Shown here: piece by piece, positions 4,239 through 30,659 of the stretch
Layout: the number at the start of each line of letters is the position of its first letter
Position numbering within the stretch: position 1 is the stretch's first letter
Origin: Octopus bimaculoides
Lineage: Eukaryota
Direction of reading: 5' to 3'
Length of the DNA stretch: 33,125 nucleotides
NCBI RefSeq assembly: GCF_001194135.2
Contig: NC_068983.1
Span: 90,606,265 to 90,639,389, forward strand
Notes under the pieces: model-generated
Databases searched by the model: none
Seen by the model: the letters and a program-made list of their open reading frames with translations, nothing else
Told to the model about the DNA's origin: nothing
Program-made: the position numbers and the translations under genes

Positions 4239-4960
4239 AGGACAGCTGCATAAAAAAGTGTCGATCACTGAAAGTAGATGATACCCATGGAAGAGGGGCA
4301 CCCAGGAAAATGTAGGATGAAGTGGTAAGGACCAATCTCAGGATGTTCAGTCTCATGGAGGAAATGATAATGGACCAAGATATCTGGCAACATGTATTTC
4401 CTTTGTGGCAGCGCATCTGTTTCTCTCTTCATTCCTGATCTCTCTCTCTCTCTCTCTCTCTCCAGCCAGGTAATCTTGTACCTCTTCTACAGCAAGACAC
4501 CTGTTTNNNNNNNNNNTCTCTCTCTCCAGCCAGGTAATCTTGTACCTCTTCTACAGCAAGACACCTGTTTCTGTCTCTCTGTCTCACTATAACCTTTCAT
4601 CATCCAACACAAGAACACCTCCTCCAATGCTCCCTCCTCTCTCAAAAAAGTTTTTTTTGTCTTGCAAGTACTTGGTGACCCTGTCAGTGCAGGTGCCACT
4701 CAGAAGCACTCAGTCCACACTGTAAAGTGGTTGGCATTTGGAAGGGCATCTAGCTGTAAAAACTTTGCCAAAACTGACCTCGTCTGTGTTTGTGCCACGT
4801 AAAAAGTACTAAGCCCACTCTGCTGAGTGGTTGGTGTTAGGAAGGACATCCAACTGTAAAAACCCTGCCAAAACAGTTACAGCAGTCTTGTGCAGGCTTC
4901 TGTCATTCCACCCATGCCAGCATCGAAGGCAGATGTTAAATGATGCTGATGATGATGATG
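4177..4960 (+). mobile_element. RTE-type LINE 3' fragment (ORF C-terminus and 3' UTR with (GAT)n tail), interrupted by SSRs and a gap
   Basis: Translates KKCRSLKVDDTHGRGAPRKM*DEVVRTNLR. The 3' UTR motif gtggttggtgttaggaaggacatccaactgtaaaaacc and the gatgatgat tail are shared with the LINE at 28700-30717. Confidence 0.8.
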
Positions 4961-6638: not shown

Positions 6639-8116
6639 TATTAGATCAGCCAATAAATATACTTCTTTCATTTTTCAATTAAAATAAACAAAGTTCTTTT
6701 TTAATCTAAAAATACTCTCCTTCATTTTCTACAATGCTTTTTCATCAATCTGGTAGACTTCCAAGACCCTCTTTCAAAATTCACTTGTCCGTGAAAAATA
6801 CTCCTCTAGTACTGTTCTGACCTCATCTACAGAATTCATATTTTTTTCATCCAAATGCTTTTGAAGACTGCAGAATAAATGATAATCAGATGGGGCAATG
6901 TCCGGCGAATATGGTGGGAGGGGCATCATTTCCCATTCAAACTGGTCCAGCCTTTGGAATGTCATCCTCACTGTATATGGCCAAGCATTATCCTAATTGA
7001 AGAACACTTTTTCTCTTGAAACCAAAGATGGTTGTTTTTTTTTTCTCACATTAACTTAATGCAGTATATGGGTATTGGACAATAAGCGTAAGCCTGTTTC
7101 AACAGTGGTTCCAGTAATTCCAAACTGGAAAACTACAGCCTAGAAGATGAAGCTTATCCTGGAAGATTTGTAGAAATCAACGAGGACGTCCTGCAAACCC
7201 TGGTGGAAAAAAATCCCATCGTAACTGTTGAGGAACTAGCAGAGAAGCTACTGCTCAAGCTGCTCACAGTAGATTTCCTTTGTTATTATTTGGTTTGGAT
7301 TTCAAAGTTCAAAGTGGACTAAACCTTTCATGTTCCACCAAACAGATAACAACACCTTACATGGGTGAAGACTTTCTTTAGCCTGGGGTGTTGGTGTTTC
7401 TCTTTTCCCTACCCACTCTCTTCAACACTTGACATTTTTATAGAGAACCCATTTCCTGTCACCAGTTACTACTATTCGGTCCCAAAAAGGTTCATTAAGT
7501 TCATTCATGAGATGTGACAGCAAAGAAGAGCACACATTCACTCTCTGTGCATGATTAGACTTGGAAAGTTTGTGAGGAACACATCGACCCAATTTGCTGA
7601 CTTTTCTGATGGCATGCAAGTATTGATGAATGGTTGAATGATCAAAACCAAGCTTCTCTGCTAGTTCCTCAACAGTTACGATGGGATTTTTTTCCACCAG
7701 GATTTGCAGGACATCCGCGTTGATTTCTACAAATCTTCCAGGACAAGGTTCGTCTTCTAGGCTGTAGTTTCCAGTTTGGAATTTCTGGAACCACTGTTGA
7801 AACAGGCTTATGCTTATTGTCCAATCCCCATATACTGCATTAATATTCCTCACACTTTCTGTTGCGTTGTTGCCTTTATTGAACTCATAAAGCAAAATAT
7901 ACTGAATGTACTCCTTTGTCACTTCCGTTATAGCTTTGAAAAAAATAACTGTTAAAATCGAACTGCACTCTTCAAAACTTGCACTAAGAATAAGTACAAG
8001 GTAAAATTACTATTAGCTTTCATAACAAGTTGATGCAGGTAGTTTATCCCATCCCCACTCCAATTTTTAGTTCATGCAATTGAAAAAACTGCATTATTTA
8101 TGGGATGACCATTTTA
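6639..8116 (-). mobile_element. Mariner transposon, family A copy b, with an internal inverted duplication
   Basis: Minus-strand ORFs 7422-7922 (LLYEFNKGNNATE...CVPHKL...VVTGDRKWVLY) and 6774-6971 (PPYSPDIAPSDYHLF). 5' TIR at ~8087-8112 and a degraded 3' TIR at ~6641-6660. Nested inside the Sola2 element. Confidence 0.92.
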
Positions 8117-12262: not shown

Positions 12263-12384
12263 ACGTATCCACAAGTTAATTGGACACAAAGCTGAGGTTA
12301 GCAGCTGTCAGTTTAACTGGGACTCTTCCTTGGTTGTTTCTGGCTCCATGGACAAGACATGCAAATTATGGGACATAGCCTCAG
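12263..12384 (+). CDS. DAW1: Internal coding exon of DAW1 (WD40 repeat)
   Basis: Acceptor tttccactag ending 12262, donor gtaata at 12385. Translates A+[40 protein letters not shown]+G (122 bp, phase 2 to 1), in frame with both neighbours. Matches recalled DAW1 [33 protein letters not shown]. Confidence 0.93.
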
Positions 12385-12654
12385 GTAATATAGTTCATTA
12401 GTACAGCAGCTAAACACCAGGTATAAGAGTTATTACAGAAATATCTTTATATTTTCTAGGTGCATATACGAGTACAAATACTTATAAGAACACACAGAGA
12501 TGTGTAGCACCCTCATCATATTCATTGTTGAAAATATAGATGCACATATGCACTTATACATGCACACAAATATACTCACAAACACATACACAAGTCAGCA
12601 CAGTAAAAGTAACATTAGTAGTGTGTGTGTGTGTGTGTGTGATAGATCTGCCAC

Positions 12655-12860
12655 AAGCTTACAGGTTTATTAAGTTGGAGCTTGTCCCAAATTCCATGAG
12701 TACAATATGCCTCCTCAGAATGAGATGCTAATCCATTCCATGTTAATGCCCAGCTGTTGCTGGCACTCATTCCTAACTGAGTAGACTGGAGCAATGTAAC
12801 ATGAAGTGTTTTGCTCAAGAACACAACATTCTAATGATTGTGAGCTCAACCCTTCTAGGC
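12655..12860 (-). mobile_element. Old SINE remnant (family 2)
   Basis: Reverse complement has gagctcacaatcat...tgttgtgttcttgagcaaaacacttcat...ctccagtctactcag, similar to the SINE at 23480-23745. Confidence 0.5.
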
Positions 12861-12879
12861 CCTACACACACACACACAC

Positions 12880-13310
12880 ATCATCATCATCATCATCATT
12901 CTTTTAATATTCAGTTTTCCAGGCTTGCTTGGATTAGATGGAATTCACCGAGACAGATTTTCTATGGCTAAATATCCTTCTTGTCTTTAATCTTCACTTG
13001 TTTCCAAGCAGTGTAATATTTCTCCATGATTGAACTTATTTTCACCAAAGATTAGGAACAAATGACACTTTGTATAACATAATGGTGATGCTCACTCACC
13101 ATTATCACGCAATGTCACGACAAAGAGGCACAGGTACATACATGACAAGCTGCTTTCAGTTTTTGTCTACTAAATCCACTCACAAGGTTTGGTTAGCCTG
13201 TGGCTATAACAGAAGACACTTGCCCAGTGTACCATGAAATGGGATGCAACCCAAAAGCATATAGTTAGGAAGTGAATTTCTTAATGACATGGCATTGCTA
13301 GTGTTTGTAT
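12880..13310 (-). mobile_element. SINE: family 1 head with a body ending in an RTE-like (GAT)n tail
   Basis: Head at 13150-13310 (aaatccactcacaagg...gaagacacttgccc on +); (cat)n at 12880-12899 preceded by an RTE-like terminal motif. Confidence 0.65.
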
Positions 13311-13372
13311 CCATGACTACACCTATAATCATACCAGCACTTATAGCCATGCCCATGCCTATTATATTTATA

Positions 13373-14257
13373 TACAGAGTGTCCCAAAAGTCACTAATGG
13401 CTTTCAATTTTTAATAACTTCCTTAACTTTACAAATAAATGCATGACATTTTGATACAATATAAAGGACATAGTGGAAATTAACATGCACAAGTCAAATT
13501 TTGCAACACCACTATATCACATATGAAAAATGACATCGCTTAAATCACAGCTATTTTTGGCTTTGCACACCTGTGCTCTTTCCAAAACTTGCACCATAAC
13601 ACCCTCAAGAATTTCAAACCCCACTTCTCTGATTTCTCTATTGATGTTCTTCAGTTGCACTAGGGTCTCCGGTTTGTTGATGTAAACCCTCTCTTTCAGG
13701 TATGCCCACAAGAAAATATCAAGGCTAGTCAAGTCTGAAGAAATGAAGGCCATTCAAAGTAGATCTCACACATGGTTCCAGCAAGATGGGACAACTGCTC
13801 ATATCGCAAGAGAAACAATGCAGTTGCTACAGCAGTGCTTTGGAGAGAGAATAATCTTCTGCTATGGCTATGTCAATTGACCTTCATGTTACCCAGATTT
13901 GACTAACCAGAATTTTTTCTTGTGGGGATACCTGAAAGAGAGGATTTAAGTCAACAAACTGGAGACCCTGATGCAACTGAAGAACATCAATAGAGAAATC
14001 AGAGAAGTGGGCTCTGAAACTCTTGAGGGTGTTATGATGCAAGTTTTGGAAAGAGCATAGGCATGCGAAGCTGAAAATGGCTACCATTTAAGTGATGTCA
14101 TTTTTCATATGTGATGTAGTGGTGTTGCAAAATTTGACTTGTGCATATTAACTTCTTTTATGTCCTTTATATTGTATCAAAATTCCATGCATTTATTTGT
14201 AAAGTTAAGGAAGTTATTAAAAATTGAAACCCCTCAGTGACTTTTGGGACACCTGTA
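13373..14257. mobile_element. Fold-back non-autonomous Tc1/mariner (maT/DD37D-like) built from two inverted 3' ends
   Basis: TA-cagagtgtcccaaaagtcact ... agtgacttttgggacacctg-TA. Arms 13375-13752 and 13877-14255 are mutual reverse complements, each encoding a degenerate DLT.LDFFLWGYLKERVY...RAQ.C...HLSDVIFHM*. The centre encodes WFQQDGTTAH. Confidence 0.9.
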
Positions 14258-14701
14258 TCTGAACAGTATACAGTGAAAAGATTCAAGATATATCAGTTGC
14301 TGCTAGTTTCACCTACTCAGTTACATTTTAATTGGTAATACAATTTTTCCAATCAAACCCATAACTAACTTTATAGATCTGGCAATAACTGATACTTANN
14401 NNNNNNNNATATATATCTTTATCTTTAATTTTATCCTTTCCTTTTGCCAAACCTCACTTCCTTCCATGTTCTCATGGAAAACTGAGAACAAGGCACATCA
14501 CTTGTCTGACAGTGGCGTTCATTTCCATCTAACATGATGTCAAAATGTGGTGACATAAGTATACAGACACACACACACACACATTCCAGGGAATGATATC
14601 TTCTAACCATCTTCATCTCCACGACGGTCAATTCTGTTGTCTTTTCAATCCAGTAATGTTATGCATAAAACTTACAAGTCTCTTACACTTTATATTGTAA
14701 T

Positions 14702-14760
14702 TCAGTATATGGGGATTGGACAATAAACATAAGCCAGTGTCAACGGTGGTTCCAGAAATT
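14702..14760 (+). mobile_element. Short mariner family A fragment
   Basis: cagtatatggggattggacaataaacataagccagtgtcaacggtggttccagaaatt matches 21395-21451. Confidence 0.7.
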
Positions 14761-14994
14761 TGCATTTGTACCTAATAATCAGCTTATGTTAAGGATGCAT
14801 ACATGAGACAATGTAACTAACTATCTTATAAATAATCTCTCATGTTTTATTTCATTTTCTACATATACTCTGTATAATATTCAAACCTGGATTTCATAAG
14901 TAGGAATACTATTGCAATACTTAAATAGAAATACACATGGAGTTCTAAATACTAGTTATTTGTCACACAACCAAAGGTTTAAATTGCATTGGAG

Positions 14995-15031
<37 letters not shown>

Positions 15032-15036
<5 letters not shown>

Positions 15037-15951
15037 GGTGTTTCAAAAACTTTGATATCATTTGAGATGTAAATATCACAGAAACTACATAGTCAAAGCA
15101 AATGGAACTAAACAGGCTTAAGGTTGAGCAACATAACATTTATTCCTCCAAATTTGAATGAGAAATTCAAAGGTATGTGGATTCCATGAACAAAAAGAAA
15201 AATGGCCCATGAAGATGTTTCTTGGAGATGGTGCAGAACACATTTACTTTTGGTGAGTCCTCATGCTCAACTGTGGCATGGGGATTTTCTTTGCCTCAAA
15301 TGTGAACATTATGCTTATTGACTTTGCCATTCATATGAAATGTGGCCTCATCACTGAAAACAAGACGTTCTTTGAACTTGGCTTCTTCAAGTTTCTCTTG
15401 TGTATCAACACAGAACTGTTTGTGCTTTTGCTTGTCATTGGCTGTTATGGCGTGAATGAGCTTCAGCTTGTGGGGTTTCATTAGCAAGCATTTCCTCAGG
15501 ACACACCAGACTGTCGTTGGAGGAATTTAGGTTTCCAGACTTGTTCTTCTTATGGATTTCTTAGGGCTTCGCAAAAGTTTTTGGTGAACCAGCTCGACCA
15601 TCTCTTCCGATGTTAGCGGTTGTCCAGATCCTTTTGCCCTGCACATACAGCCTTCCTCTTTGAATTTTTTGTGCCATGTCCAAATCTGCATTGCCATTGG
15701 TGACTTTTTAGAGAACTCTCACAAATGCATGCTGCACAGTCTTGTTCGACTGTGTTCGAACATACTGTGTTTGAGCATACTCCAACACACAAAACACCTT
15801 TTTTCTTCCTGTCAATGCCATTTCTATACCTGAAAAGATACACATATCAAAAATTAAACATAAAATTTTAACCTGTTTGAAGTCATTTGAACAAGAACTA
15901 GCAAAGTTATTAGATTGTGAAATTATATCAAATGTTTTGAAACACCCTGTA
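15032..15951 (-). mobile_element. Internally deleted Tc1/mariner (maT/DD37D-like) element inserted in (TA)n
   Basis: TIRs cagggtgtttcaaaaactttgatat and atatcaaatgttttgaaacaccctg, each flanked by TA. The minus strand encodes MALTGRKKVFCVLEY..., RLVFSDEATFHMNGKVNKHNVHI and PKVNVFC...GPFFF, then is truncated. Confidence 0.9.
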
Positions 15952-15960
15952 TATATATTT

Positions 15961-16715
15961 ATAGGAGTGGCTGTGTGGTAAGAAGCTTGCTTACTAACCA
16001 CATGGTTTTGGGTTCAGTCNNNNNNNNNNNNNNNNNNNNNNNNNNNNNNNNNNNNNNNNNNNNNNNNNNNNNNNNNNNNNNNNNNNNNNNNNNNNNNNNN
16101 NNNNNNNNNNNNNNNNNNNNNNNNNNNNNNNNNNNNNNNNNNNNNNNNNNNNNNNNNNNNNNNNNNNNNNNNNNNNNNNNNNNNNNNNNNNNNNNNNNNN
16201 NNNNNNNNNNNNNNNNNNNNNNNNNNNNNNNNNNNNNNNNNNNNNNNNNNNNNNNNNNNNNNNNNNNNNNNNNNNNNNNNNNNNNNNNNNNNNNNNNNNN
16301 NNNNNNNNNNNNNNNNNNNNNNNNNNNNNNNNNNNNNNNNNNNNNNNNNNNNNNNNNNNNNNNNNNNNNNNNNNNNNNNNNNNNNNNNNNNNNNNNNNNN
16401 NNNNNNNNNNNNNNNNNNNNNNNNNNNNNNNNNNNNNNNNNNNNNNNNNNNNNNNNNNNNNNNNNNNNNNNNNNATATATATATATATATATATATATAT
16501 AGATGTATGTATTTGTGTGTCTGTGTTTGTCCCTCCACAATCACTTGACAAATGATGTTGGTGTGTTTATGTCCCCGTAATTTAGCAGTTGAGCAAAAGA
16601 GACTGATAGAATAAGTACTAGGCTTACAAAGACTAAGTCCTGGGGTCGATTTGATTGACTAAAGGTGGTGCTTCAGCATGGCCGCAATTAAATGACTGAA
16701 ACAAGTAAAAGAGTA
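15961..16715 (+). mobile_element. SINE (family 1 head, gap, microsatellite, 3' tail ending gactgaaacaagtaaaagag)
   Basis: Head ggagtggctgtgtggtaagaagcttgc...gggttcagtc lies before the N gap. Tail gataagtactaggcttacaaag...ggtcgatttg...cagcatggccgc lies after it. Joining across the gap is inferred. Confidence 0.65.
16020..16474. other. Assembly gap (others at 4507-4516, 14399-14408, 17773-17929, 26940-27093, 29384-29723, 32203-32212)
   Basis: Runs of N, mostly abutting microsatellites. Confidence 1.
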
Positions 16716-16731
16716 TATATATATAAATATA

Positions 16732-17772
16732 TATCAGGTTGAGTAAAAAGTAAGCAATGTTTAGAACCATGAAGAATGTGTACCAGATTTTTGCAGAGTT
16801 TTGAATTTTAAAAAAATATTTTTTTGAAATTGTCTGATAATACAAACAAAGGCTTGCCAAAATGGCATGAATAAATTAACATTGATATTTTTTCACTGTT
16901 GTTACAATCATCTGAAATGGAATTGTCAAATTTGAGCAATTTTGCTATTCAACTTCAAAAAAGGACATAAAGCATCTGAAACTGCTTGCAATATCAATGA
17001 AACATTTGGTGAGGAAATGACCAGTGATTGGTCAGCTTGAAATGGTTTAAATGATTTTGCAGTGGAGACCTGAGCCTTGAAGATCTTGAGCATAGTGGAT
17101 GCCCATCTGTCATCCATGACGGTCAATTAAAGACTGTCATTGAGAAAGATCCACATAAAACCACTCGAAAACTGGCAAAAGAACTTCAAGTTAGCCAGAA
17201 AACTACCTTCAACCACTTGCTGGCAATTGGAAAATCAAAATAGCTCAACAAATGGGTACTACACAATTTGACTGCAAATCAGAAAATGTGCAGATATGAA
17301 ATTTGCTTGTCACTTCTCCATAACCTGACCGATCCATTTATTCATCTTGTGATGAAAAGTGGATTCTGTACAATAACAAAAAACATTCTTCACAGTTGTT
17401 GGACCAAAATGAAGTACTGAAAACCTTCCCTAAACCTGAACTCTTCAAAAAGAAGGCTATGGTGACTGTTTGGTGGTGTACTGCTGGACTCATCTACTAT
17501 AACTTCTTAAAACCTAGAAAAAACATTACTGCAGAAACATTTTGCCATGAAATTTGCCAAAATGAATGAAAAACTGCTACTCTTCCGTCCCAGAGGGCCA
17601 ATCAATCTTCATGACAATTCTTGACCACACATTTTACTAGTGACGCTCCAAAAGTGAGGGAACTTGGCTACGAAGTTCTCCCACCCCCCAGCTTATTCCC
17701 CAAACCTTTCTCCTACAGACTACCACTTTTTCAAGTACCTTGATGGTTTCCTGCAAGAGGAGTTAAAAAATC
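16732..17772 (+). mobile_element. Mariner transposon family B (decayed, 3' end in gap)
   Basis: TA followed by the TIR-like tcaggttgagtaaaaagtaagcaatgttt. Remnants include FNFKKGHKASETACNINETFG, KWVLHNL, DEKWILY and PPAYSPNLSPTDYHFFKYL. Confidence 0.88.
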
Positions 17773-17929
17773 NNNNNNNNNNNNNNNNNNNNNNNNNNNN
17801 NNNNNNNNNNNNNNNNNNNNNNNNNNNNNNNNNNNNNNNNNNNNNNNNNNNNNNNNNNNNNNNNNNNNNNNNNNNNNNNNNNNNNNNNNNNNNNNNNNNN
17901 NNNNNNNNNNNNNNNNNNNNNNNNNNNNN

Positions 17930-17985
<56 letters not shown>

Positions 17986-18137
17986 GAGTGAGTAGATAAA
18001 CGAAAGGAAAAGGCACTCAACACATTTAGTAGGGGGTTACATGGTATCATTATTTAAAACAGTTTGATTTGGTTTCATGCAACTTAAAGTTTTATAGGCT
18101 TCTAACAGAAACCTATCTCATTCAGGCCCAGATTACT

Positions 18138-21127
18138 GAATGGAGGAATACAGGAAATCCAAGATGGTTACTGGAAATTGGGCTAATTTCTTGAACCATG
18201 TGACTTGACAGCAAGCTGGTGGTGTCTAGGTGTCTGGCAGGCCTTTGAAGGGACTTGGAAACTTACAGAAGCAAGGCTGGTGAGTGTATGTGTGTGTGTG
18301 TGTGTGTGTGTGTACGCATGTGTGTGTGTGAGTGTGTATGTGTGTGTGCATATTTGTGTATGTATGTGTGTAGACCAGATGTGACTCTATACTAGGCATA
18401 TGAGTGCATGAATGTGGATGTGTTATTGGCTGTATTAATGTATGTGCATGTGTATGAATATGTGTGAGTTAGTCCTACTGTATATGCTTGCATATGCAAG
18501 CATGTTTAGGATGCATCTATGAGTGTTTGTACATTCTGGTAATTGTGTATAAATGTATAAGTGTGTGTGTTTGTCTAGAAGAACATATGTGTGCATATGA
18601 TTTTGTCTGGTGTGTGCATGTGTATGTACATATATGTGCATGCTTTTGGTATGTATGTGTGCAGGTGTGACAGATGTATGTTAGTGTAGTGCAATAGTAC
18701 TGCTGGGGTGAGGGTGGGGGAATTAGGCATTGGACTGAAGTTTGGTGGAATGAGGGGTAAAGAGAGGACAGGTGAAGTATATGTATATAGATGTGTGTGT
18801 GTGTGTGTGTGCATGTGTGTGTGTGTGATTGTATATGTATGTGATTATACATAGATGTGTATATGTGTGTGTTTGCATGCATACCCCATGTTTATGGGGG
18901 TGAATGTAGGAGGTTATAGGGGTGCATAAGGTTGTGAGGTTGGCCTGTGATCTGTGTAAGTATTGGTGGTTAGGAACTCTGTTCTTGGTTGTTGGCCAGC
19001 CAATACTAAGATGGTATATCTGAGTTACCAGCAGCCAGTGCATTGAAGTACACCTTGAGGTCATACCTCTGATGGCAGTGGCAGCAATAACATAGTTCAT
19101 ATTTCCTGTTGATAGATACTACAGGTTGGTGGAGAATGTGCAATCTTTTGCAGAGACAGAGCTGGCAATTGAGAGTGCTAGAGTGGGGCCTTGTTGATGA
19201 TAGTCCATTCACTGTTGGAGGTTTTATTCCAGAGATTACAAATGTTTATGCAGACCGCAGGTTGACCTCACAACCTTATACATTCCCTATAACCCCCATA
19301 CATTCACTGCTATAAATTGGTGTGCGCACACAAACACATACATGCACACACATATGTGCACACATGCATGTGCGCGCACGCACACACGCACATACACACA
19401 CATATCTATGTATATATACTTCTCTTCCCTCTTCTCCCCTATACCACCAAACCTCAGCCCAATACCTATTCCCCACCCCTCAGCAACACTGTTGCCACTA
19501 CACTAGCATATATCTGTCATGCCTGTACACATAAATACCAAAATCACGAATATATATGTACACACACATGCACATACCAGATAAAAACAAGCATATATGT
19601 TCTTCCAGACAAGCACACGTATGTTTATGTACCAATACAAGAATGTACACATGTACACACATCCATACATGCATCCTAAACATGCTTGTGTGCATCTGTG
19701 TACAGTAGGCACTAATGTATGTGTTCATACTGATACATGCACACACACACACACACACATATACAAACACACTTGTACAATTACATATGCACATCCACTT
19801 ATACATCTGGCATACGCACATACATACACACACACATACTCTTGCTGGCCTTGGTTCTGATGACTTTTATGTTCCTTCAGAGGCCTGTCAGACACCTAAA
19901 TACCAACTTCCTGTGCAACCAAAGAGTCTGAGAAATTCTCTTTTCTCAAGCATCTAGTATTGCTGGAATGCTGATCTCACTTCTAACAATATCATGTGAC
20001 CTGCCTTTACTAATAGTAGTTCATTTTCCAGTAGCCATCTTGGACTTTCCGTATTCCTTTCTGTTCATCTCTGATTTTTTTTATGTGGTAGGCTTAAATA
20101 ATTGTTGAGCTATTCCTTAACATAAAACCAATGGTAGCTTTAAAATACAAATAAAGAATCTTTATCTACCAATGTGGTGTTGAACGCTCATTCTCATTGT
20201 TTGATATTTATTTGATATTTATGTATGTATAGATGACAGCTTTACAAATCGAGGACCCCAAGGATTACTTTAAAGGATCACAAGCCTAACTTTACCCCTA
20301 AACCCATGGTCAGGCTTATATACCTGTTCAAGTTGGAGTTAGGAAGATTAAGTAAACTGATTATTGAGAGGCACATACCCACCCTTAGGAATATGATCAA
20401 GCTAGATTCATAGTCTAATTCATTTGAGGTACTGCACTGGTTTAGAGACATTAAGGATAAAGGGAACACAAAGTTTATACAAATAGACATTTCCAGTTAT
20501 TACACTTCCATAAATCCCATACTGTTAAATACTGCTAGGAAAAACACTAGGATGACAAGGGAAGAAATAAATATTATAATAGAGGCTAGAAAAATGATTA
20601 TAGAATATTATGGAAAACTGTGGATGAAGAAAGACAGATCTAGTAATTTCAACATAACCATGGGTTCAAATGACTTGGTTCAAGTTACAGATCTTGTAAG
20701 CATTTACATCTTAAGTTGTATAGGGGTGGAGTTTCTGGAACTAGTGGGTGAATTATATAGGGATAACACACTCTTTACAGTACAAAATTGTAACATTTGC
20801 ATATTAGAGAAGTATAGGAAGCAGCTAATAAAATTCTTTAAATAATTAGAACTTAAGATATCAATAGAAACAGAGTATAGTAAAGTTAATTTTCTTCATA
20901 TCACACTCAAGTTTAGCACTGGACTACATCACCCTTTCCATAAGCAAAATGAAAATCTAAAGTATGTAAGTTGAGGATCTCATCATCTGAAAAGTAACAT
21001 AAACTTTATCCCCAAAGGGGTGTTTGCTAAAATATCTAGGCTGTTGACAAATAGGAACACATTTAAAAGACATGAGGGATACTACAACATGGCATTAATA
21101 GAGACTGGTTATTGTGGAAAAATCAAA
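18138..21127 (+). mobile_element. Penelope-like element 2: inverted pLTR-like pair followed by a decayed RT; truncated by a mariner
   Basis: RT on + from ~20235: RITLKDHKPNF...VRLI, FIQIDISSYYTSI, FNITMGSNDLVQVTDLVSIYIL, ELYRDN, VNFLHITL, FHKQNENLKYVS. Arms 18138-18960 and 19245-20066 are inverted. The spacer encodes, on minus, a Penelope-type C-terminus (CQLCLCKRLHIL...SINRKYEL...CHCHQRYDL). Confidence 0.85.
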
Positions 21128-21942
21128 TATTGGGTCAATCCATAAATAATGTGGTTTTTTTCAATTGCATGAACTAAAAGTTGGAGGGGATGGGATAAAT
21201 TACCTGCATCAACTTGCTATAAAACCAGGTAGTAATTTTATCTTGTACTTATCCTTAGTGCAAGTTTTGTATAGTACTGTTCAATTTTAACAGTTTTTTT
21301 ACTATAATGGAAGTGACAAAGGAGCATATTTGGCATATTTTGCTTTATGAATTCAATTAAGAGAACAACGCAATTGAAAGTGGGAGGAATAATTCAGTAT
21401 ATGGGGATTGGACAATAAGCATAAGCCAGTGTCAACGGTGATTCCAGAAATTCTGAGCTGGAAACTAAAGCCTAGAAGATGAACCTTGTCCTGGAAGATT
21501 TGTAGAGCTCAACGAGGACATCCTGCAAACCCTGTTGGAACAAAATCCCATCATAACTGTTGGGGAACTAGCAGAGAAGCTTGGATTTGGTCATTCAGCC
21601 ATTCATCTTCTCTTGCATACCATTGGAAAAGTCAAATTGCGTGCAGAGAGTGAATGTGTGCTCTTTCTTGCTGTCACATCTCATGAATGAACCTTTTCTG
21701 GACCAAATAGTGACTGGTGATGAGAAACGAGTTCTCTATAAAAATGTCAAGTGTTGAAGAGAGTGGGTAGGGAAAGGAGAAACACCAGCACCCCAGGTTA
21801 AAGAAGGTCTTCATCCATATAAGGTGTTGTTGTCTGTTTGGTGTTATATGAAAGGTTTAGTTCACTTTGAACTTTTGAACCCAAACCAAATGATAACAAA
21901 GGAGATTTATTGAGAGTCAACGCTAGAGGAAAAATGACCATT
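21128..21942 (+). mobile_element. Mariner family A copy c (3' truncated)
   Basis: TA followed by TIR ttgggtcaatccataaataatgtggttttt; colinear with 841-1680 apart from deletions. Confidence 0.9.
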
Positions 21943-21949
21943 TTAAAAC

Positions 21950-22400
21950 ACATACAGATGGATAGGCACATAGGTTATATGAACAGACAAGCACATATAC
22001 ACAAATGAAGACTGAAACACATGACCATTTTTACACACACTTCACTTTGCACAAGGACACATATGGAGATATACAACCATACATACAGACACAGTACATA
22101 GTCACAAAAACCCATACACACACACTCAGACATGTACACACAAGGAGACAGAGATCCACACACACACACACACACACATGCAAACACACACACAAACACA
22201 CACACATTCAAGCACACACACATATAAAAACACACAGACACAAACACCCAAGCACATGAATATGCAGAATACATACATACAAACGTATGCATATACATAC
22301 ATATATACATATGCATGCACACACATACATACATGCATACACTTACATGCAGGCATAAACACATACATACATGTGTATGTGCACATACACTGTCCCCCAC
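21950..22400. repeat. Degenerate (CA)/(CATA)-rich microsatellite field
   Basis: Low-complexity CA/TA-rich composition seen directly. Confidence 0.85.
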
Positions 22401-23089
22401 ACATGTGGACAAACAAACAAAACGAATACAGCTTGAATAATGGACAGAGTCAACAACTATTGAAAAGGTTGCAAGATGCAACAAAACTTTTAGAAATATG
22501 ATAAGTAAATGAGTGGAAATTTTACCAGTGTTAAATTATAGGGTACCAAAAGAGAATAACTCTCCACAGACACAACAGAATATGCTTCAACACACTAACT
22601 CACATAAAGAATCTTGCAAACCAAATCCAAAAATGAAATTTGGAGAATATCTAACCTAAAACACTGCAAATATGTTCATGTGTGTTGACCTGATTACAAA
22701 CATTAATGTTTTATGACTGTCCTTTTCCCAGATTTTGGCCATCCTATCTGCTCCCCACATCTGCATCTAAGTGACCCCTTTCTCTATTCTTTCTATTCCT
22801 TCCTCTATTCTTTCTATTTCTTCCTCTATTCTTTCCTTCCTTCTCTTCACCTTATTGCAGTGTTCTGCTTTGTTATAACCAGAAATGGCTCTGATGAAAG
22901 TAGCATTAATTCTTTTAGGTGGTTCAGTTTTCTCAATTGATCAACAGACCAATTGAGTAAACCTATCAGTAATGTATCTATAATGACTACTGGAAACAGC
23001 AGTAAGCCAAATTTATTCTAATAAAGGAAAAATATGTAATGACCATTATTTACAAGCAGAGATTGCTTGGGATTAAAATGGCATAGTTT

Positions 23090-23150
23090 TTTATTCTTTT
23101 ACTTGTTTGTCATTTGACTGTGGCCATGCTGGAGCACTGCCTTTAGTTGA
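23090..23150 (-). mobile_element. SINE 3' tail fragment followed by a purine-rich SSR (23150-23300)
   Basis: cttttacttgtttgtcatttgactgtggccatgctggagcactgcctttagt is the reverse complement of the tail at 16655-16712. Confidence 0.75.
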
Positions 23151-23438
23151 ACAGAAAGAAAGGAAGCAAGAGGAAGAAAGAAAGAAAAGGGATAGAAAGA
23201 AGAAAACAAAGAAAGAAAAAGGAAGAAAGAAGGAAAGAAAGAAAGAAAGAAAGGAAAGAAGGCAGGAAGGAAGGAAAGAAGACAGACTGAAAGAGAAGAA
23301 CTATTACAGAGGCTAAGCAAGAAAAACAGAGAATGAGAAAAAGGAGAGAATCAGTTGAAAACTGTAGAAATGGATACATATTACACACACAGACACACAT
23401 ATAGACAGCCTTTGTTTTATAGATATAGATACCTTGTC

Positions 23439-23479
<41 letters not shown>

Positions 23480-23480
<1 letters not shown>

Positions 23481-23745
23481 CCCCTTCAGTCATGAATGAC
23501 CATAGGATTACCCCTCCAAGGCACAAGTCCAGGCAAGATTGTTTATGGAAGATCAGCAGTTGCCCAAGTATACTAGTTTTCCCTCTCCATGCCACCAATG
23601 TTATCCAAAAGAAAAGCAAGTGAACTGGATAAACGTGAAATAAAGCGTCTTGCTCAAGAACACAACATACAGCCTGGTCTAGGAATTGAAGTCACTACCT
23701 CATGATTGTGAGCCTGACGTGATAACCACTGAGCCATGCACATTC
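23480..23745 (-). mobile_element. tRNA-derived SINE (family 2)
   Basis: Reverse complement begins gcatggctcagtggttatcacgtcaggctcacaatcatgaggtagtgacttcaattcc (A and B box-like), then tgtgttcttgagcaagacgctttatttcac. Confidence 0.75.
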
Positions 23746-23806
23746 GCACGCGCGCACGCACGCACGCACACACACAAACACACATGCACACACACACATA
23801 CACGCG

Positions 23807-23848
<42 letters not shown>

Positions 23849-23989
23849 ATCAACAGTCCCAGCATCACTTTGAAAAGGAATTTTTAAAACAAGATTTCAT
23901 GGCTGGTGTTTTATTCTACTTGTATTTACATGTAGTTGTTGGGTGTCATTGATTAATTTTTTCATGTCATCATCACTCAGTTTGAAAAG

Positions 23990-25990
23990 ACAACATTTGA
24001 TGTCCAAATTAAAGCATTATGACAGTGAAAGCAGAAGGACAAACTGGCTCATAAAGCATGCAAAAAGTGCTGTTCTCAGCAAACCATGATTAAGTATGCA
24101 GACTTTCAAGCAAACACAAATACAAAACTTTGATGTGGGGCCAACTAGATATTGTACACAAGCCACAAACCACACAGAATTAAAAGTACCGGGAAACTAT
24201 TATTAAAACTCTATTGTTTGCTGTCCAACAAAACATAAACCATCAGGACATTGAGAGGACTACCATATTTGTGAAATTTGTATATCTTAGGTCAAAGGAT
24301 ATTCCTTGGCTAGGAGAAAAACTGAAAAGTCAGTTACAATACATATGAAGTGGACCTCACCTATTGCCCAAAATGCAATTCTTGATATAATGGCTGAAAT
24401 TGTTTTAAGCACATTAGTAAATGATGTGAAAAAGTGTTCAGGATATTCTGTTATCATTGATGAAACGTCAGACATCAACAGGATTGAGCAATACCTAATA
24501 TACGTCAGATTCATCCCTGAAGGAAAATTCATGAATTTTCATTGGTTTCATGTAATGCTTTCTACTGAAGGCAGTGTTTTATGAGTTGGTCAAAAATATA
24601 CTTGACAAAATTGTTGGAGAATGTATTAATAGTACAATGAATATGAATGATGTTCATAGATATTGGGCAACAAAAATAAAGAAGTATTCTCTGTTTCTCA
24701 TCTATGGCCATGATTACAGGTGCTTCTTAAATTTTGATAATAGATACTGAGCCACTTTGAAATACCTTAAGAACAACTAAATATATGTACAATTTTAAAG
24801 GCTAGTCCCAAATGCCATGCACCCTTATTTATCGAAGTGTAATTAGATGATATAGATATGAAGAGGTAAAAGCCATAGTAGTGATTACCTCATATATGGA
24901 CAGCAGGATATTATTAATTCTTGATTTTCACTTCTTTAAATTTTCACTTCTTTAAATTGGTAATGTTGCAAACAATACAATCAAATACAAACAATCTTAG
25001 AAAATACCTCCAGGGAAATACTGTAGATGTTATAACAGCTAGAACAGCTACAGCAACCTGGAAAACTCTTGCTGATCGCAAAAATAAAGAAAGAAAAAGG
25101 GAGCAAGAGTTCTATTGAGATAAAGGGGATCTTCCAAATTATAAGTAGGGTTTGTGAAGCAGTAATGAAAGTGCCACTGGTTCAAACTGTCAAAGACTGC
25201 CATAACATATCGACCTACTATTTAAGTTTGAATAAGATTAATGTAATCTTGATTTAATGCAATCATGATTTAATGGTAGTAACCAGTTTACAACACTACC
25301 ACTCACATTCTATGTTCAAAACTGGAAGGACATGAAGGAGAAATTTCAAAAGTAAATTCTTATAATTAGAATTTTTTTTTGCATAGGTTTGTCCTTGCAT
25401 AACAAAAGTAAGATGTGATGTTCATGCTTTTAACTAAAAGGTATTTTCAATGTAGGCAAATAAGTATTTTTCACAGTGACACATGACAAAAAAGTTATTG
25501 ATTTAATAGGCCCTAATGTATTATTATAATAATTTGTGTACTCAGTTATATAATCTTTAATCAAATGCTTCAGATGACTTAGATGAGCACTATTAACTTG
25601 TTTCATCACATTGTAATGTTGATCTAGATGTCTTAAAAGTGGGAAAAGCAATTTACACAAAATTTGCCACATATTATATGGTGCCATCAGGTTTACAGGC
25701 AACTACAGCCAGTGTTGTTGAAACTATTTACATGAATGGCCTTCATGACATGACCAGTTTTCAACAAAACTGCTGATATTTTGTAATAATTTCTGCTGCA
25801 TTGTGTTTACAGTAGACATCAAGGGGAAAAAAAGACACATCTAAGGAGTCAATTGGGTCAAATTCAACAAAAGGGTGTGACATTTCTAAATACTAGGGGC
25901 AAAGTACACTAGCATATCTTTTTGGCAAAAATGTTAACTAAATGATAGATATTTTTACCGCTAAGAAAGACAGCAAACAATACTCCTTTT
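23990..25990 (+). mobile_element. hAT-superfamily (ZMYM1/DUF4371-like) transposase fossil, interrupted by the DAW1 duplicate
   Basis: IIKTLLFAVQQNI, WTSPIAQNAILDIMAE...YSVIIDETSDINRIEQYLIYVRF and YLQG lie before the duplicate. VDLDVLKV, KTHLRSQLGQ and MIDIFTAKKDSK (hAT dimerisation-domain-like) lie after it. Confidence 0.72.
25286..25530 (+). repeat. Perfect 245-bp duplicate of the DAW1 exon 3' part, donor and intron start
   Basis: Base-for-base identical to 28286-28530 by line comparison; offset is exactly 3000 bp. Confidence 0.97.
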
Positions 25991-26520
25991 CAATTTCATA
26001 TTGTGTGGTTTGTCCTGTGTATCATCAACTGATAAAAAATACTTTTTATTGGGAATTAGTATTAGTTAATTTTATCAGTATAAAATTATGGGCAAATCTG
26101 CCTCTTTAAACAATGAATTCCATATGCCCTTGGAGGTGAATGTTCTGGAAAAAAAAAACCCCCAAATAAGCATAGAGTAAGAAAAGTGTAAAAAAAATTC
26201 ATTGAGCTATTAATTCTGCTAGAAACAAATGGAATCTCTCTCTGAGTAAAGAGAAGGTAATATGATACTTGTGAATGAAGTGCAAGGTAGCAAAAGAGGG
26301 TAACCTTGTTCTGCTGTATGTGTAATGTGTGATTGAACAGAACATAAGTGACAAGTGAAAAACTGAGTATAAGAGGAATCAAGCATGTAATATGCAAGAC
26401 TGTGTTGGTACAAACATGTGATGTTTATAGAAGATAGTTGTTGTTTAAAGGTCTACCAAGTATTCCATGTGGAAGGAACCCATGGAAGATGAAGGCCAAT
26501 AAAAACATAAGTTTTATATA

Positions 26521-26880: not shown

Positions 26881-27093
26881 ACACAAATATTTGCTAAGTT
26901 GAAGACTAGATACTACCCCATATTTATTTAAATATTTATNNNNNNNNNNNNNNNNNNNNNNNNNNNNNNNNNNNNNNNNNNNNNNNNNNNNNNNNNNNNN
27001 NNNNNNNNNNNNNNNNNNNNNNNNNNNNNNNNNNNNNNNNNNNNNNNNNNNNNNNNNNNNNNNNNNNNNNNNNNNNNNNNNNNNNNNNNNNNN

Positions 27094-27514: not shown

Positions 27515-28050
27515 CATCATCACCATTTAATGTCCATTTTCCATGCTGGCACGGATTGGATGGTTTGACCATACTGGAATAGTTTGGATGGTTCAAACTA
27601 GAGAGCTGCACCGGGCTCCAGTCTGATTTGGTATGAACTCTACAGCTGGATGCCCTTCTTAATGCCAACCACTTTACAGAGTGTGCTGGGTACTTTTATG
27701 TGGCACCAGCACAGGACTTTGCAGGTCAATCCTCTTCACCAGGGGTGGGGGGACAAACCTTATCATTTCTGCTGTGGAGCACGGATCTTCTTCAGTACAG
27801 CAGAGTGCCAGGCATCTTGATCTTTGTCATTTTTCATGAAAGATTCAGCGTCTTGTGGTTGTCCTTCACTATTTCATCCCATGTCTTCCTGGGCCACCTC
27901 TACACATTCCATCTACTTTGAGAGATCGGCACTTTTTTATGAAGCTAACGGCATCCATCTTCATCACATGACCAAACCAGTACATTCTTCTCTCTTGCAC
28001 ACAGCATCTAATTCCTCTTATGCCTAACTTCTCTCTCAATACATTCTTCA
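27510..28050 (-). mobile_element. RTE-type LINE 3' fragment
   Basis: Minus-strand ORF LREKLGIRGIRCCVQERRMYWFGHVMKMD...KKCRSLKVDG, then the shared 3' UTR and gat tail at ~27512-27525. Confidence 0.85.
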
Positions 28051-28178
28051 TGCCTGCTATTGTTTGTCTTTCTCTCCCCCTCTCTCTCTATATATATAGA
28101 TAAAGATAGATAGATAGACAGACAGATATGTGTGTGTGTATAAATGTTCTATATTTTTCCTCTTTTTATTTTCTCCAG

Positions 28179-28351
28179 GAAAATGTATTGGAACGTTCCG
28201 TGGTCACAAGGACGAAGTTCTAGATGTTGGCTTTGACCTGGCTGGTCAATATTTATTGACTGCCTCTGCTGATGGCACTGCTCGTGTTTACAACACTACC
28301 ACTCACATTCTATGTTCAAAACTGGAAGGACATGAAGGAGAAATTTCAAAA
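28179..28351 (+). CDS. DAW1: Internal coding exon of DAW1 (WD40 repeats)
   Basis: Long polypyrimidine tract with ctccag ending 28178, donor gtaaat at 28352. Translates GA+[57 protein letters not shown] (173 bp, phase 1 to 0). Matches recalled DAW1 TASADGTAR...[11 protein letters not shown]. The three exons total 402 bp = 134 codons without a stop. Confidence 0.95.
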
Positions 28352-28699
28352 GTAAATTCTTATAATTAGAATTTTTTTTTGCATAGGTTTGTCCTTGCAT
28401 AACAAAAGTAAGATGTGATGTTCATGCTTTTAACTAAAAGGTATTTTCAATGTAGGCAAATAAGTATTTTTCACAGTGACACATGACAAAAAAGTTATTG
28501 ATTTAATAGGCCCTAATGTATTATTATAATTATTTTATTACTTTAATGATCTCAGAGAAATGGAAGACAACATTGATTCCTGTAAGATGTGAAACTAAAT
28601 ACTTCTGAAACAATAACAATGATAACAATTTACTCTTTGGGAGAGGCTTGATTATCTCAATGCTACATTTCCATATTTTTTGTTAAATTTGAAGCAGAT

Positions 28700-30659
28700 A
28701 GGATGGCCATGGAAAAAGCTTTTGACAGGGTCCCCTGTTCCCTTATCTGGTGGTAAATGAGGAAACTAGGGATAGATGAATGGTTAGTGAGAGCTGTGCG
28801 TGCCATGTACAGGGACGCTGTCAGTAAGGTGAGGGTTGGCAACGAGTATAGCGAAGAATTCCGGGTAGAGGTAGGGGGTCCACCAAGGTTCAGTCCTCAG
28901 CCCCCTCCTATTTAACATAGTCCTCCAGGCAATAACAGAGGAATACAAGACAAGATGCCCCTGGGAGCTCTTCTATGCTGATGACCTTGCACTAATTGCT
29001 GAGTTACTATCAGAAATAGAGCAGTTTCAGGTGTTGAAGCAAGGACTAGAATCAAAGGGCCTTAGAATCAACCTAGCTAAAACCAAAGTCCTAATAAGTA
29101 GGAAGGTAGACAAAACACAAACCCCTACAGGTAGATGGCCCTGCTCGATATGTAGAAAAGGCATAGGTAGAAACTCTATAAGATGTACCCAGTGTAAGCT
29201 ATGGACACATAAGAGGTGTAGCAATATCAAAGGAAGGCTAACTAGGAAGATAGTTTTTGTATGTGTCAGATGTTCAGGAGCAATAAACACTGAAAATGTG
29301 CAGAAAACAACTTTTGCTACATTCCAGGGAGAAAAACTAGAAGTAGTTGATAGCTTCCATTATCTAGGTGACCAAGTTAGTAGNNNNNNNNNNNNNNNNN
29401 NNNNNNNNNNNNNNNNNNNNNNNNNNNNNNNNNNNNNNNNNNNNNNNNNNNNNNNNNNNNNNNNNNNNNNNNNNNNNNNNNNNNNNNNNNNNNNNNNNNN
29501 NNNNNNNNNNNNNNNNNNNNNNNNNNNNNNNNNNNNNNNNNNNNNNNNNNNNNNNNNNNNNNNNNNNNNNNNNNNNNNNNNNNNNNNNNNNNNNNNNNNN
29601 NNNNNNNNNNNNNNNNNNNNNNNNNNNNNNNNNNNNNNNNNNNNNNNNNNNNNNNNNNNNNNNNNNNNNNNNNNNNNNNNNNNNNNNNNNNNNNNNNNNN
29701 NNNNNNNNNNNNNNNNNNNNNNNACCTAAGAAGCATCAGTTGTGGTGTGCAAGAGAGACGATTGCGCTGGTATGGTCATGTGGCGAGAATGGATGAGGAT
29801 AGCTGTGTGAAAAAGTGCCACACCCTAGCAGTTGAGGGAACCTGTGGAAGAGGTAGACCCAGGAAGACCTAGGATGAGGTGATGAAGCACGACCTTTGAA
29901 CATTAGGCCTCACCGAGGCAATGACTTCTGACCGAGACCTTTGGAAATATGCAGTGCGTGAGAAGACCCTGCAAGCCAAGTGAGACCACAATCCGAGGCT
30001 TCTGCCAAGAGTGTAGCCAGCCCACTTATGCATACCTTTCCTTCATTGGACACTAAACTCTGCTTGCGAAGACCTGTTGAGACAAGTGAAATCGAAATCA
30101 AGCCAAATTCGACGACTAGCACCCATGCCAACCTCTCTTTCATTGGACACTAAACTCGACTTGCGAAGACCTGTTGGGTCAAGTGAAATCAAAATCATAA
30201 TTGAACCAATTTCAATGACTGGCACCTGTGCCAGTGGAGCACCATCCAAGCATGATCATTGCCAGAGCAGCTGTCTGGCTTCTATGCTGGTGGCACATAA
30301 ATAGCACCATTTGAGTGTGATCATTACCAGCGTCACCTTACTGGCACTTAGGCCAGTGGCACCTGAAAAAACATTTGAGCGAGGTTGTTGCCAGTGCCGC
30401 TGGACTGGCTGCTGTGCAGGTGGCACGTAAAAAATACCTTTTGGGGTGTAGCTGTTTCCAGTACCGCCTGACTAGCCCTTATGCCGGTGGCATGTAAAAG
30501 TACCCACTACACTCAGAGTGGTTGGCATTAGGGAGGGCATCCAGCTGTAGAAACTCTGCCAGATCAGATTGGAGCTTGGTGCAGCCATCTGATTCACCAG
30601 TCCTCAGTCAAATCATCCAACCCATGCTAGCACGGAAGGTGGACGTTAAACGATGATGG

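What the first reader, a model, noticed from the sequence alone, without database searches (positions are those of the whole stretch)
25286..25530. Perfect copy of a DAW1 exon end inserted in a hAT fossil creates a potential in-frame mini-exon
Seen: 245 bp identical to 28286-28530 (last 66 nt of the exon, its GT donor and 179 nt of intron) lie exactly 3000 bp upstream. hAT transposase motifs continue on both sides, so it reads as an insertion, with no TSD. The left junction forms an AG (25285-25286). Splicing 12384 to 25287 would give G+TT = Val and then [21 protein letters not shown] in the native frame, ending at the copied donor (25352). Inference: used instead of the true exon, this 65-nt exon would delete 36 aa, most of one WD40 blade. 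Used together with it, it would frameshift as a poison exon. The acceptor is weak (no pyrimidine tract, competing AG at 25278-25279). The 100% identity and round offset mean either a very recent templated insertion or an assembly or sequence artefact.
Basis: partly seen in the sequence, partly recalled or inferred. Interest (0 to 1): 0.72.

Follow-up and report, generated by a model that had tools for sequence, protein, structure and literature searches.

The report
Young copied patch inside DAW1 intron
A 245-base copy of an exon-intron boundary of the cilia gene DAW1 really sits about 3 kb upstream in the same intron; it is a recent, species-specific scar of DNA repair, and nothing shows it is used as an exon.

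Summary
Bases 25286-25530 are identical to 28286-28530.

It is not an assembly artefact. In the DNA read graphs of four samples of this species, the 245-nt block is its own node at about twice the depth of its four flanks. All four junctions are present. Eight samples from five sequencing studies carry the left junction.

Three related species have the transposon fossil uninterrupted: ...AACCA-AGAC-ATAATTTG. So the block is a derived insertion. It cost 4 bases (AGAC), left no target-site duplication and no poly(A), and has 0 and 2 nt of microhomology at its junctions. It is young: 0 differences in 245, against 1.7-2.4% divergence of the flanks between species.

This is a cis "copy-paste" patch made during break repair or by replication template switching. 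That is a known kind of mutation.

The round 3000 offset means nothing, because it includes a 154-N gap of estimated size.

The mini-exon arithmetic is right (65 nt, in frame, open). But the acceptor is poor (9/20 pyrimidines against 19/20). Five RNA assemblies show only the normal splice, 12384 to 28179-28351 to the next exon, with no branch. Rare use cannot be excluded.

Ordinary, low interest.

The parts
25286..25530 (+). Inserted copy: 66 nt of exon 3' end, the GT donor and 179 nt of intron. Derived in this species.
   Evidence: Identical to 28286-28530. Absent from the orthologous site in organisms B, C and D. Both junctions are in DNA contigs of organism A.
28286..28530 (+). Donor (original) copy at the end of DAW1 exon 28179-28351 and the start of the following intron.
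   Evidence: It is the only copy in organism C, with orthologous exon-left and intron-right flanks. It is the part used in mRNA.
25282..25286 (.). Left junction (25285/25286). It is blunt, with 0 nt microhomology. The ancestral AGAC that followed 25285 is lost.
   Evidence: Related species read ...25285 + AGAC + 25529.... A 1490-nt contig and raw reads of X21 and X22 cross this junction.
25529..25531 (.). Right junction (25530/25531). The AT at 25529-30 is shared by the block end and the ancestral site (2-nt microhomology).
   Evidence: the joint resumes at 25529. Single contigs run 25286->25900 in X1, X3, X4 and X9, and contigs of 657-1038 nt start at 25501 in X6, X7, X8 and X12.
24100..25285 (+). 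hAT-superfamily transposase fossil (DUF4371 / FAM200-ZBED5 type), part left of the insertion. Frameshifted and full of stops.
   Evidence: collinear tblastn hits at 24100-24339, 24369-24732, 24951-25058 and 25186-25239.
25531..25989 (+). Same fossil, part right of the insertion (C-terminal dimerisation region, badly decayed).
   Evidence: Only a weak collinear hit (aa 244-380, E 2.2). Continuity with the left part is shown directly by the uninterrupted orthologues.
12263..12384 (+). Upstream DAW1 exon. Its donor at 12384 is spliced to 28179.
   Evidence: RNA contigs in X17, X25, X27 and X29 continue from 12384/85 into AAAATGTATTGGAACG....
28179..28351 (+). Canonical 173-nt DAW1 exon (GKCIGTF...GEISK). 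Its polypyrimidine tract is strong (19/20).
25287..25351 (+). Hypothetical 65-nt in-frame mini-exon. No evidence of use.
   Evidence: Open frame and weak acceptor, 9/20 pyrimidines. No RNA junction or branch.
26940..27093 (.). 154-N scaffold gap between the two copies. It makes the 3000 offset an estimate and leaves the cis linkage resting on the scaffolding.

Best explanation
In the lineage of this species, after it split from three close relatives, a break or stalled fork occurred in a dead hAT transposon inside a DAW1 intron. It was repaired with a 243-245-nt patch copied, not cut, from the exon-intron boundary about 3 kb downstream on the same strand. Four bases (AGAC) were lost. One junction is blunt and the other shares 2 nt. 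There is no target-site duplication, no terminal repeat and no poly(A). The patch is homozygous in every sample examined. It brings a working 5' splice site and 66 nt of exon into the intron, but as far as the RNA data show the spliceosome ignores it. Shown here: the block is real, it has two copies, it is derived, the junction anatomy, and the canonical splicing. Inferred: the repair mechanism. I favour end-joining capture of a locally copied fragment or a template-switch copy from DNA. A cDNA of nascent pre-mRNA remains possible.
For: Two-copy graph. In X6, X7, X8 and X12 the block is a separate 245-nt contig at depth 25.3/57/105.5/114. The exon-left flank is at 15.4/28.9/41.1/55, hAT-left at 16/30.2/51.8/58.4, intron-right at 17.7/31.4/51.9/72.7 and hAT-right at 13.6/28.6/46/56.1. 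The hAT-left contig runs into the block without a fork in X1, X3, X4, X6, X7, X8, X9, X12 and X41, so there is no empty-site allele. Raw 2026 reads cross the left junction. The empty site ...25285+AGAC+25529... lies in one contig each in organisms B, C and D, and organism C holds only the exon copy. Age: 0/245 differences against 1.7-2.4% flank divergence gives P = 0.003-0.014 if the insertion were as old as the split. Both copies carry C at 25403/28403 where B and C have T. The features match 'class 2' templated sequence insertions: donor intact, no TSD, no poly(A), microdeletion and microhomology (PMC5110952). RNA: searches show only the canonical path, including an unbroken 1632-nt contig at depth 93.8 in X27.
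Against: Cis linkage of the two copies rests on the scaffold across a 154-N gap and repeats. No long reads were available. The right junction is seen only in k=31 contigs; no raw read happened to be sampled there. Logan contigs dropped one of the right-hand branches in several runs: 28536-28700 is missing in X1-X5 and X9, and hAT-right is missing in X41. Absence in contigs is therefore weak evidence, and this also weakens the negative RNA result. A 245-nt patch is much longer than typical polymerase-theta inserts. The blunt left junction does not fit microhomology-primed switching well. The template is near, not 'distant' as in the described human class 2 events.
Confidence: 0.85

Rival explanations
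1. Assembly or sequence artefact: the block was pasted into the hAT fossil by mis-assembly or gap filling and does not exist in the genome.
For: 100% identity, a round 3000 offset, and a draft assembly with seven N gaps, including one clear gap artefact at 4453-4570.
Against: Both hAT/block junctions are in read-derived contigs of eight samples from four studies (2015, 2022 twice, 2025), and the left junction is also in raw reads of a 2026 study. The block has twice the depth of its flanks. The 3000 includes an estimated gap.
Confidence: 0.01
2. The copy works as an alternative in-frame mini-exon (deleting 36 aa of a WD40 blade) or as a poison exon that tunes DAW1 expression.
For: It carries an authentic donor and 66 nt of real exon sequence. 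AG at 25285-86 gives an open, in-frame 65-nt exon. Every upstream AG gives stops.
Against: The acceptor has 9/20 pyrimidines against 19/20 for the true one, and T at +1. Five RNA assemblies have one unbranched canonical path, no contig on 25100-25285, and no loose end at 25287. Losing most of a propeller blade would probably destroy the fold (inference).
Confidence: 0.07
3. The patch was reverse-transcribed from nascent, unspliced DAW1 pre-mRNA and ligated into the break (an RNA-derived class 2 templated insertion), rather than copied from DNA.
For: The template is a transcribed, sense-oriented, unspliced exon-intron stretch of the same gene whose transcript passes over the break site. Human class 2 events are enriched for transcribed sequence and are reduced by RT inhibitors (PMC5110952). 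Blunt and 2-nt junctions fit end joining.
Against: Nothing in the sequence distinguishes RNA from DNA as template. There is no poly(A) and no splice. Proximity and same orientation are explained equally well by a DNA template switch.
Confidence: 0.25
4. The duplication is old and was kept identical by gene conversion, and the other species lost it.
For: Gene conversion can homogenise nearby repeats.
Against: Organisms B, C and D share one clean empty site with 4 extra ancestral bases (AGAC). The hAT reading frame spacing fits the empty state. A precise loss would have to recreate that.
Confidence: 0.02
5. A transposon or LINE machinery moved the fragment (transduction, or a class 1 L1-ORF2-mediated insertion).
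For: The site lies in a transposon fossil, and the window is rich in transposon remains.
Against: There is no target-site duplication, no terminal inverted repeats, no poly(A) tail or AATAAA signal, and 4 bases of target were lost rather than duplicated. The hAT fossil is long dead.
Confidence: 0.02

Closest known systems
Class 2 templated sequence insertions / polymorphisms (Onozawa & Aplan, PMC5110952)
   Same: A copy-paste patch with the donor left intact. No TSD and no poly(A). Microdeletion (4 nt) and microhomology (2 nt) at the junctions. The template is transcribed sequence. The event is germline-transmitted.
   Different: The template is about 3 kb away in cis in the same intron, not a distant locus. 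An RNA origin is untested. The host is a non-mammalian animal.
Templated insertions from replication template switching (FoSTeS/MMBIR; e.g. PMC8421209)
   Same: A short stretch copied from a nearby template on the same chromosome, in direct orientation, with a return close to the starting point.
   Different: The left switch point has no microhomology. This is a single simple insertion rather than a complex rearrangement.
Polymerase-theta end joining with templated inserts (PMC7165422, PMC2943611)
   Same: Break repair with small deletion, short microhomology, and an insert copied from nearby flanking DNA.
   Different: Such inserts are typically a few to tens of bases and copied from within tens of bases of the break (general knowledge). 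Here it is 245 nt from 3 kb away.
Alternative splicing born from exon duplication (tandem exon duplication giving mutually exclusive exons)
   Same: An intragenic duplicate of exon sequence with a splice site lies in the neighbouring intron.
   Different: Only the 3' third of the exon plus the donor was copied. There is no native acceptor and no RNA evidence of use.

Membership tests
Class 2 templated sequence insertion | Donor site intact, so the insert is an extra copy | tested here: met
   Block at 2x depth and both loci present.
Class 2 templated sequence insertion | No target-site duplication, no poly(A) tail or signal | tested here: met
   Junction sequences compared with the empty site.
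Class 2 templated sequence insertion | End-joining marks: microdeletion, microhomology or non-templated bases | tested here: met
   AGAC lost. 2-nt AT overlap on the right, blunt on the left.
Class 2 templated sequence insertion | Template from a distant genomic region | tested here: not met
   The template is about 3 kb downstream in the same scaffolded intron.
Class 2 templated sequence insertion | Derived from RNA by reverse transcription | not testable with these tools
   The unspliced sense sequence is compatible with either RNA or DNA as template.
MMBIR/FoSTeS templated insertion | Microhomology at each template switch | tested here: inconclusive
   0 nt at the left junction and 2 nt at the right.
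MMBIR/FoSTeS templated insertion | Template close by on the same molecule | tested here: inconclusive
   True in the scaffold, but the linkage crosses a 154-N gap and no long reads were available.
Transposon or L1-mediated insertion | Target-site duplication plus element termini or poly(A) | tested here: not met
   None present; the target lost 4 nt.
Cassette, poison or alternative exon | Splice junction reads joining it to neighbouring exons | tested here: not met
   No such junction or graph branch in five RNA assemblies. The raw RNA runs were uninformative, with 2 reads.
Assembly duplication artefact | Junctions absent from reads and single-copy depth | tested here: not met
   Junctions present and 2x depth.
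DAW1 (host gene) | Best collinear match to DAW1 rather than other WD40 proteins | tested here: met
   5nnz and 5mzh, residues 254-350, 282 and 265 bits, against 162 bits or less for WDR5. P0031 is named DAW1 by its source.

The most novel reading that the evidence does not exclude
The patch is a newborn splice element caught at birth. In tissues not sampled here (testis, ciliated epithelia), the copied donor plus the chance AG is used at a low level as an in-frame or poison exon. That would give a dated, species-specific example of alternative splicing arising from a repair-templated partial exon copy, possibly templated by the gene's own nascent pre-mRNA.
Probability: 0.07. Interest if true: 0.5.

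Novelty: new member of a known kind. Interest (0 to 1): 0.2.

Why it matters
The main value is as a clean, fully resolved example. Donor, recipient, empty site in three sister species and base-level junctions are all in hand for a germline cis-templated repair patch in a non-model animal. It also shows how such patches can seed introns with ready-made splice donors. For annotation, the duplicate is real and should not be 'fixed', and gene predictors should not call a mini-exon here. It has no evident effect on DAW1.

Tried and rejected
- **Missing 28536-28700.** The first contig lay (X1, X3, X4) seemed to show that 28536-28700 does not exist and that the exon copy runs into the hAT right flank. 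This was rejected after one search showed that X6, from the same sample as X1 and X2, holds it, and one search showed the full four-flank graph. The missing branch is a by-product of contig simplification next to a repeat of 10^5-10^6 depth.
- **Long reads.** None are listed for this species.
- **Raw RNA reads.** X24, X38 and X39 gave only 2 reads on the block, too few to say anything.
- **Pfam on whole stop-ridden frames of the hAT fossil.** This found nothing. Fragments gave only a weak DUF4371 hit, E 0.1. A homologue search and an intact relative (L001) were needed to confirm the family. The right flank alone stays statistically insignificant.
- **Raw reads on the right junction.** No raw Hi-C read was sampled there.
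- **Planted or edited sequence.** I considered that the window had been altered, because of the round offset. This is rejected because public reads contain the junctions.

Full report
**Observation.** Bases 25286-25530 and 28286-28530 are identical over 245 nt. Identity stops sharply on the left (25285 A against 28285 T) and at 25531/28531. After that, only AT-rich chance matches let the repeat finder extend to 257 nt at 98%. It is the only long exact repeat in the window apart from a 54-nt duplicate flanking a 10-N gap.

The block is the last 66 nt of exon 28179-28351 plus 179 nt of the following intron. The host gene is DAW1. The two exons translate to WD40 repeats. Their best solved-structure matches are 5nnz and 5mzh, 'Dynein assembly factor with WDR repeat domains 1', collinear over residues 254-350. 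The window is a draft scaffold with seven N runs. One of them (26940-27093, 154 N) lies between the two copies. The 'exactly 3000' spacing therefore depends on an estimated gap size and is a coincidence, not a clue.

**Is it an artefact?** No. I laid Logan contigs (k=31 graphs of public read sets) of the same species on both loci.

In X6, X7, X8 and X12 the picture is the textbook two-copy repeat:

| Contig | X6 | X7 | X8 | X12 |
|---|---|---|---|---|
| Block, 245 nt, exactly 28286-28530 | 25.3 | 57 | 105.5 | 114 |
| Exon-left, entering | 15.4 | 28.9 | 41.1 | 55 |
| hAT-left (1490 nt), entering | 16 | 30.2 | 51.8 | 58.4 |
| Intron-right (250 nt), leaving | 17.7 | 31.4 | 51.9 | 72.7 |
| hAT-right (657-1038 nt), leaving | 13.6 | 28.6 | 46 | 56.1 |

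- X41 shows the same block node at 65.5, against about 38-44 for the three flank contigs that were laid.
- In X1, X3, X4 and X9 the hAT-left contig reads 30 nt into the block, and a single contig runs from 25286 across 25530/31 to beyond 25900.
- Raw 150-nt reads of a 2026 study (X21, X22) cross the left junction.
- In total the left junction is seen in eight samples from five studies (contigs from four, raw reads from a fifth). In the contig runs the hAT-left contig never forks at 25285, so no empty-site allele was seen.

An early scare is resolved. Bases 28536-28700 had zero contig depth in X1, X3 and X4. But X6, from the same biological sample as X1 and X2, holds that stretch completely, as do X7, X8, X12 and X41. 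The loss is a by-product of contig simplification next to a repeat of 10^5-10^6 word depth at 28700-29300.

**Which state is ancestral?** In three related species (organisms B, C and D), one contig each crosses the orthologous hAT fossil without the block. The sequence reads ...25285, then AGAC, then 25529.... In organism C the only copy of the block carries the exon on its left and the true intron on its right.

- The ancestral site was ...GTAGTAACCA-AGAC-ATAATTTGTG...
- This species has ...GTAGTAACCA-[GTTTACAAC...TTATTATAAT]-AATTTGTG...
- So the event inserted 243-245 nt and deleted AGAC. The left junction is blunt and the right one shares AT. There is no target-site duplication, no terminal repeats and no poly(A).

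Flank divergence from the relatives is about 1.7-2.4% (12-18 substitutions in about 680-760 nt). With zero differences in 245 nt, an age equal to the species split has P = 0.003-0.014. Both copies also share C at 25403/28403, where organisms B and C have T. The copy was therefore made from this lineage's own version of the donor.

**The surroundings.** The left flank is a decayed hAT-superfamily transposase of the DUF4371 / FAM200-ZBED5 type.

- Homologues match at E 1e-17 to 7e-10.
- A nearly intact relative (L001) carries DUF4371, the RNase-like domain and Dimer_Tnp_hAT in order.
- Its proteins hit the window collinearly at 24100-24339, 24369-24732, 24951-25058 (E 2e-5) and 25186-25239 (E 0.73). 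After the block they hit 25585-25989, but only at E 2.2.
- The 345 nt between the last two hits correspond to 30 residues in the intact protein. Removing 245 nt restores the expected spacing.

The continuity is proven independently by the uninterrupted orthologues.

**Mechanism.** This part is inferred. A copied, not moved, patch with a small target deletion, 0-2 nt microhomology and no retroelement marks is the signature of break repair.

- It meets every junction criterion of 'class 2' templated sequence insertions (PMC5110952), except that the template is near rather than distant.
- The nearness and same orientation also fit a replication template switch (MMBIR/FoSTeS type, PMC8421209). The blunt left junction fits that less well.
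- 245 nt is far longer than usual polymerase-theta inserts.
- Because the template is an unspliced, sense stretch of the very gene being transcribed across the break, a cDNA of nascent pre-mRNA is a live alternative. The sequence cannot decide between these.

**Mini-exon.** The arithmetic is right.

- The upstream exon ends in phase 1 at 12384. G + 25287-25351 reads [22 protein letters not shown] with no stop, and the copied donor is identical to the real one.
- Replacing the true exon would remove 108 nt (36 aa). Including both would shift the frame.
- Every AG further upstream within 350 nt runs into stops.
- The acceptor has 9/20 pyrimidines in -23..-4, against 19/20 for the true exon, and a T at +1.

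RNA contigs of five runs (X17, X25, X26, X27, X29) each pass through the 66 nt with the true exon sequence upstream (...GGCACTGCTCGT). In four of them the next exon follows downstream (CATTCAACCC...). The same contigs join 12384 to GAAAATGTATTGG (28179). In X27 this is one unbroken 1632-nt contig at depth 93.8. No contig touches 25100-25285 or 25356-25700.

So there is no sign of use. The caveats are that contigs discard rare paths, the tissues are unknown, and the three raw RNA runs gave only 2 reads.

**Caveats.** The two copies are linked only through the scaffold, across a gap and repeats, and no long reads could be found. The right junction is supported by contigs only.

**Verdict.** This is a real, young, lineage-specific, cis-templated repair patch inside a DAW1 intron. 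It is a new instance of a known kind of mutation, with no demonstrated function.

Noticed in passing
window 4453-4570: A perfect 54-nt direct repeat (4453-4506 = 4517-4570) flanks a 10-N gap at 4507-4516. This looks like an unclosed overlapping gap, so a genuine assembly artefact, unlike the 245-nt block.
   Followed up: partly
window 28700-29300 (also 27950-28135): Extremely high-copy repeat, with word depth of 10^5-10^6 in DNA contigs. It sits just downstream of the donor intron. It is probably why Logan contigs dropped 28536-28700 in X1-X5 and X9 while X6 (the same sample) kept it.
   Followed up: partly
window 1026-1835, 6873-7903, 21186-21916 (and 14698-14772): A dispersed repeat family, 84-92% identical, present in both orientations. 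By eye it encodes a transposase-like frame (mariner-like). Family not checked.
   Followed up: no
window 13379-14252: A large inverted repeat with 359-nt arms, 89% complementary, separated by 156 nt. It looks like a foldback or MITE-like element.
   Followed up: no
window 25403 / 28403 and the T-run at 25364-25372: Both copies carry C where organisms B and C have T, and the T-run is 3-6 T shorter than in B and C. So the donor had already acquired lineage-specific changes before it was copied.
   Followed up: partly
window 12384/28179 junction, run X17: X17's RNA contigs break 26 nt past the exon-exon junction with a 30-nt overlap, as expected if unspliced pre-mRNA (intron ...CAG|G) is also present. 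X17 also holds 18% of the sampled words of 24700-26100, although nothing lies on 25100-25285. This could be intronic reads or transcripts of other hAT copies.
   Followed up: no
run X41, window 25541-25720: Here the hAT-right contig is missing, although the 245-nt node is still separate. This is the opposite loss to that in X1-X5, and a reminder that these contigs show presence, not absence.
   Followed up: no
L001 3447-5618: A nearly intact hAT element of the same family (DUF4371, FAM200-ZBED5 RNase-like and Dimer_Tnp_hAT ORFs) sits on a 370-kb ENA contig, about 40% identical in protein to the fossil.
   Followed up: partly
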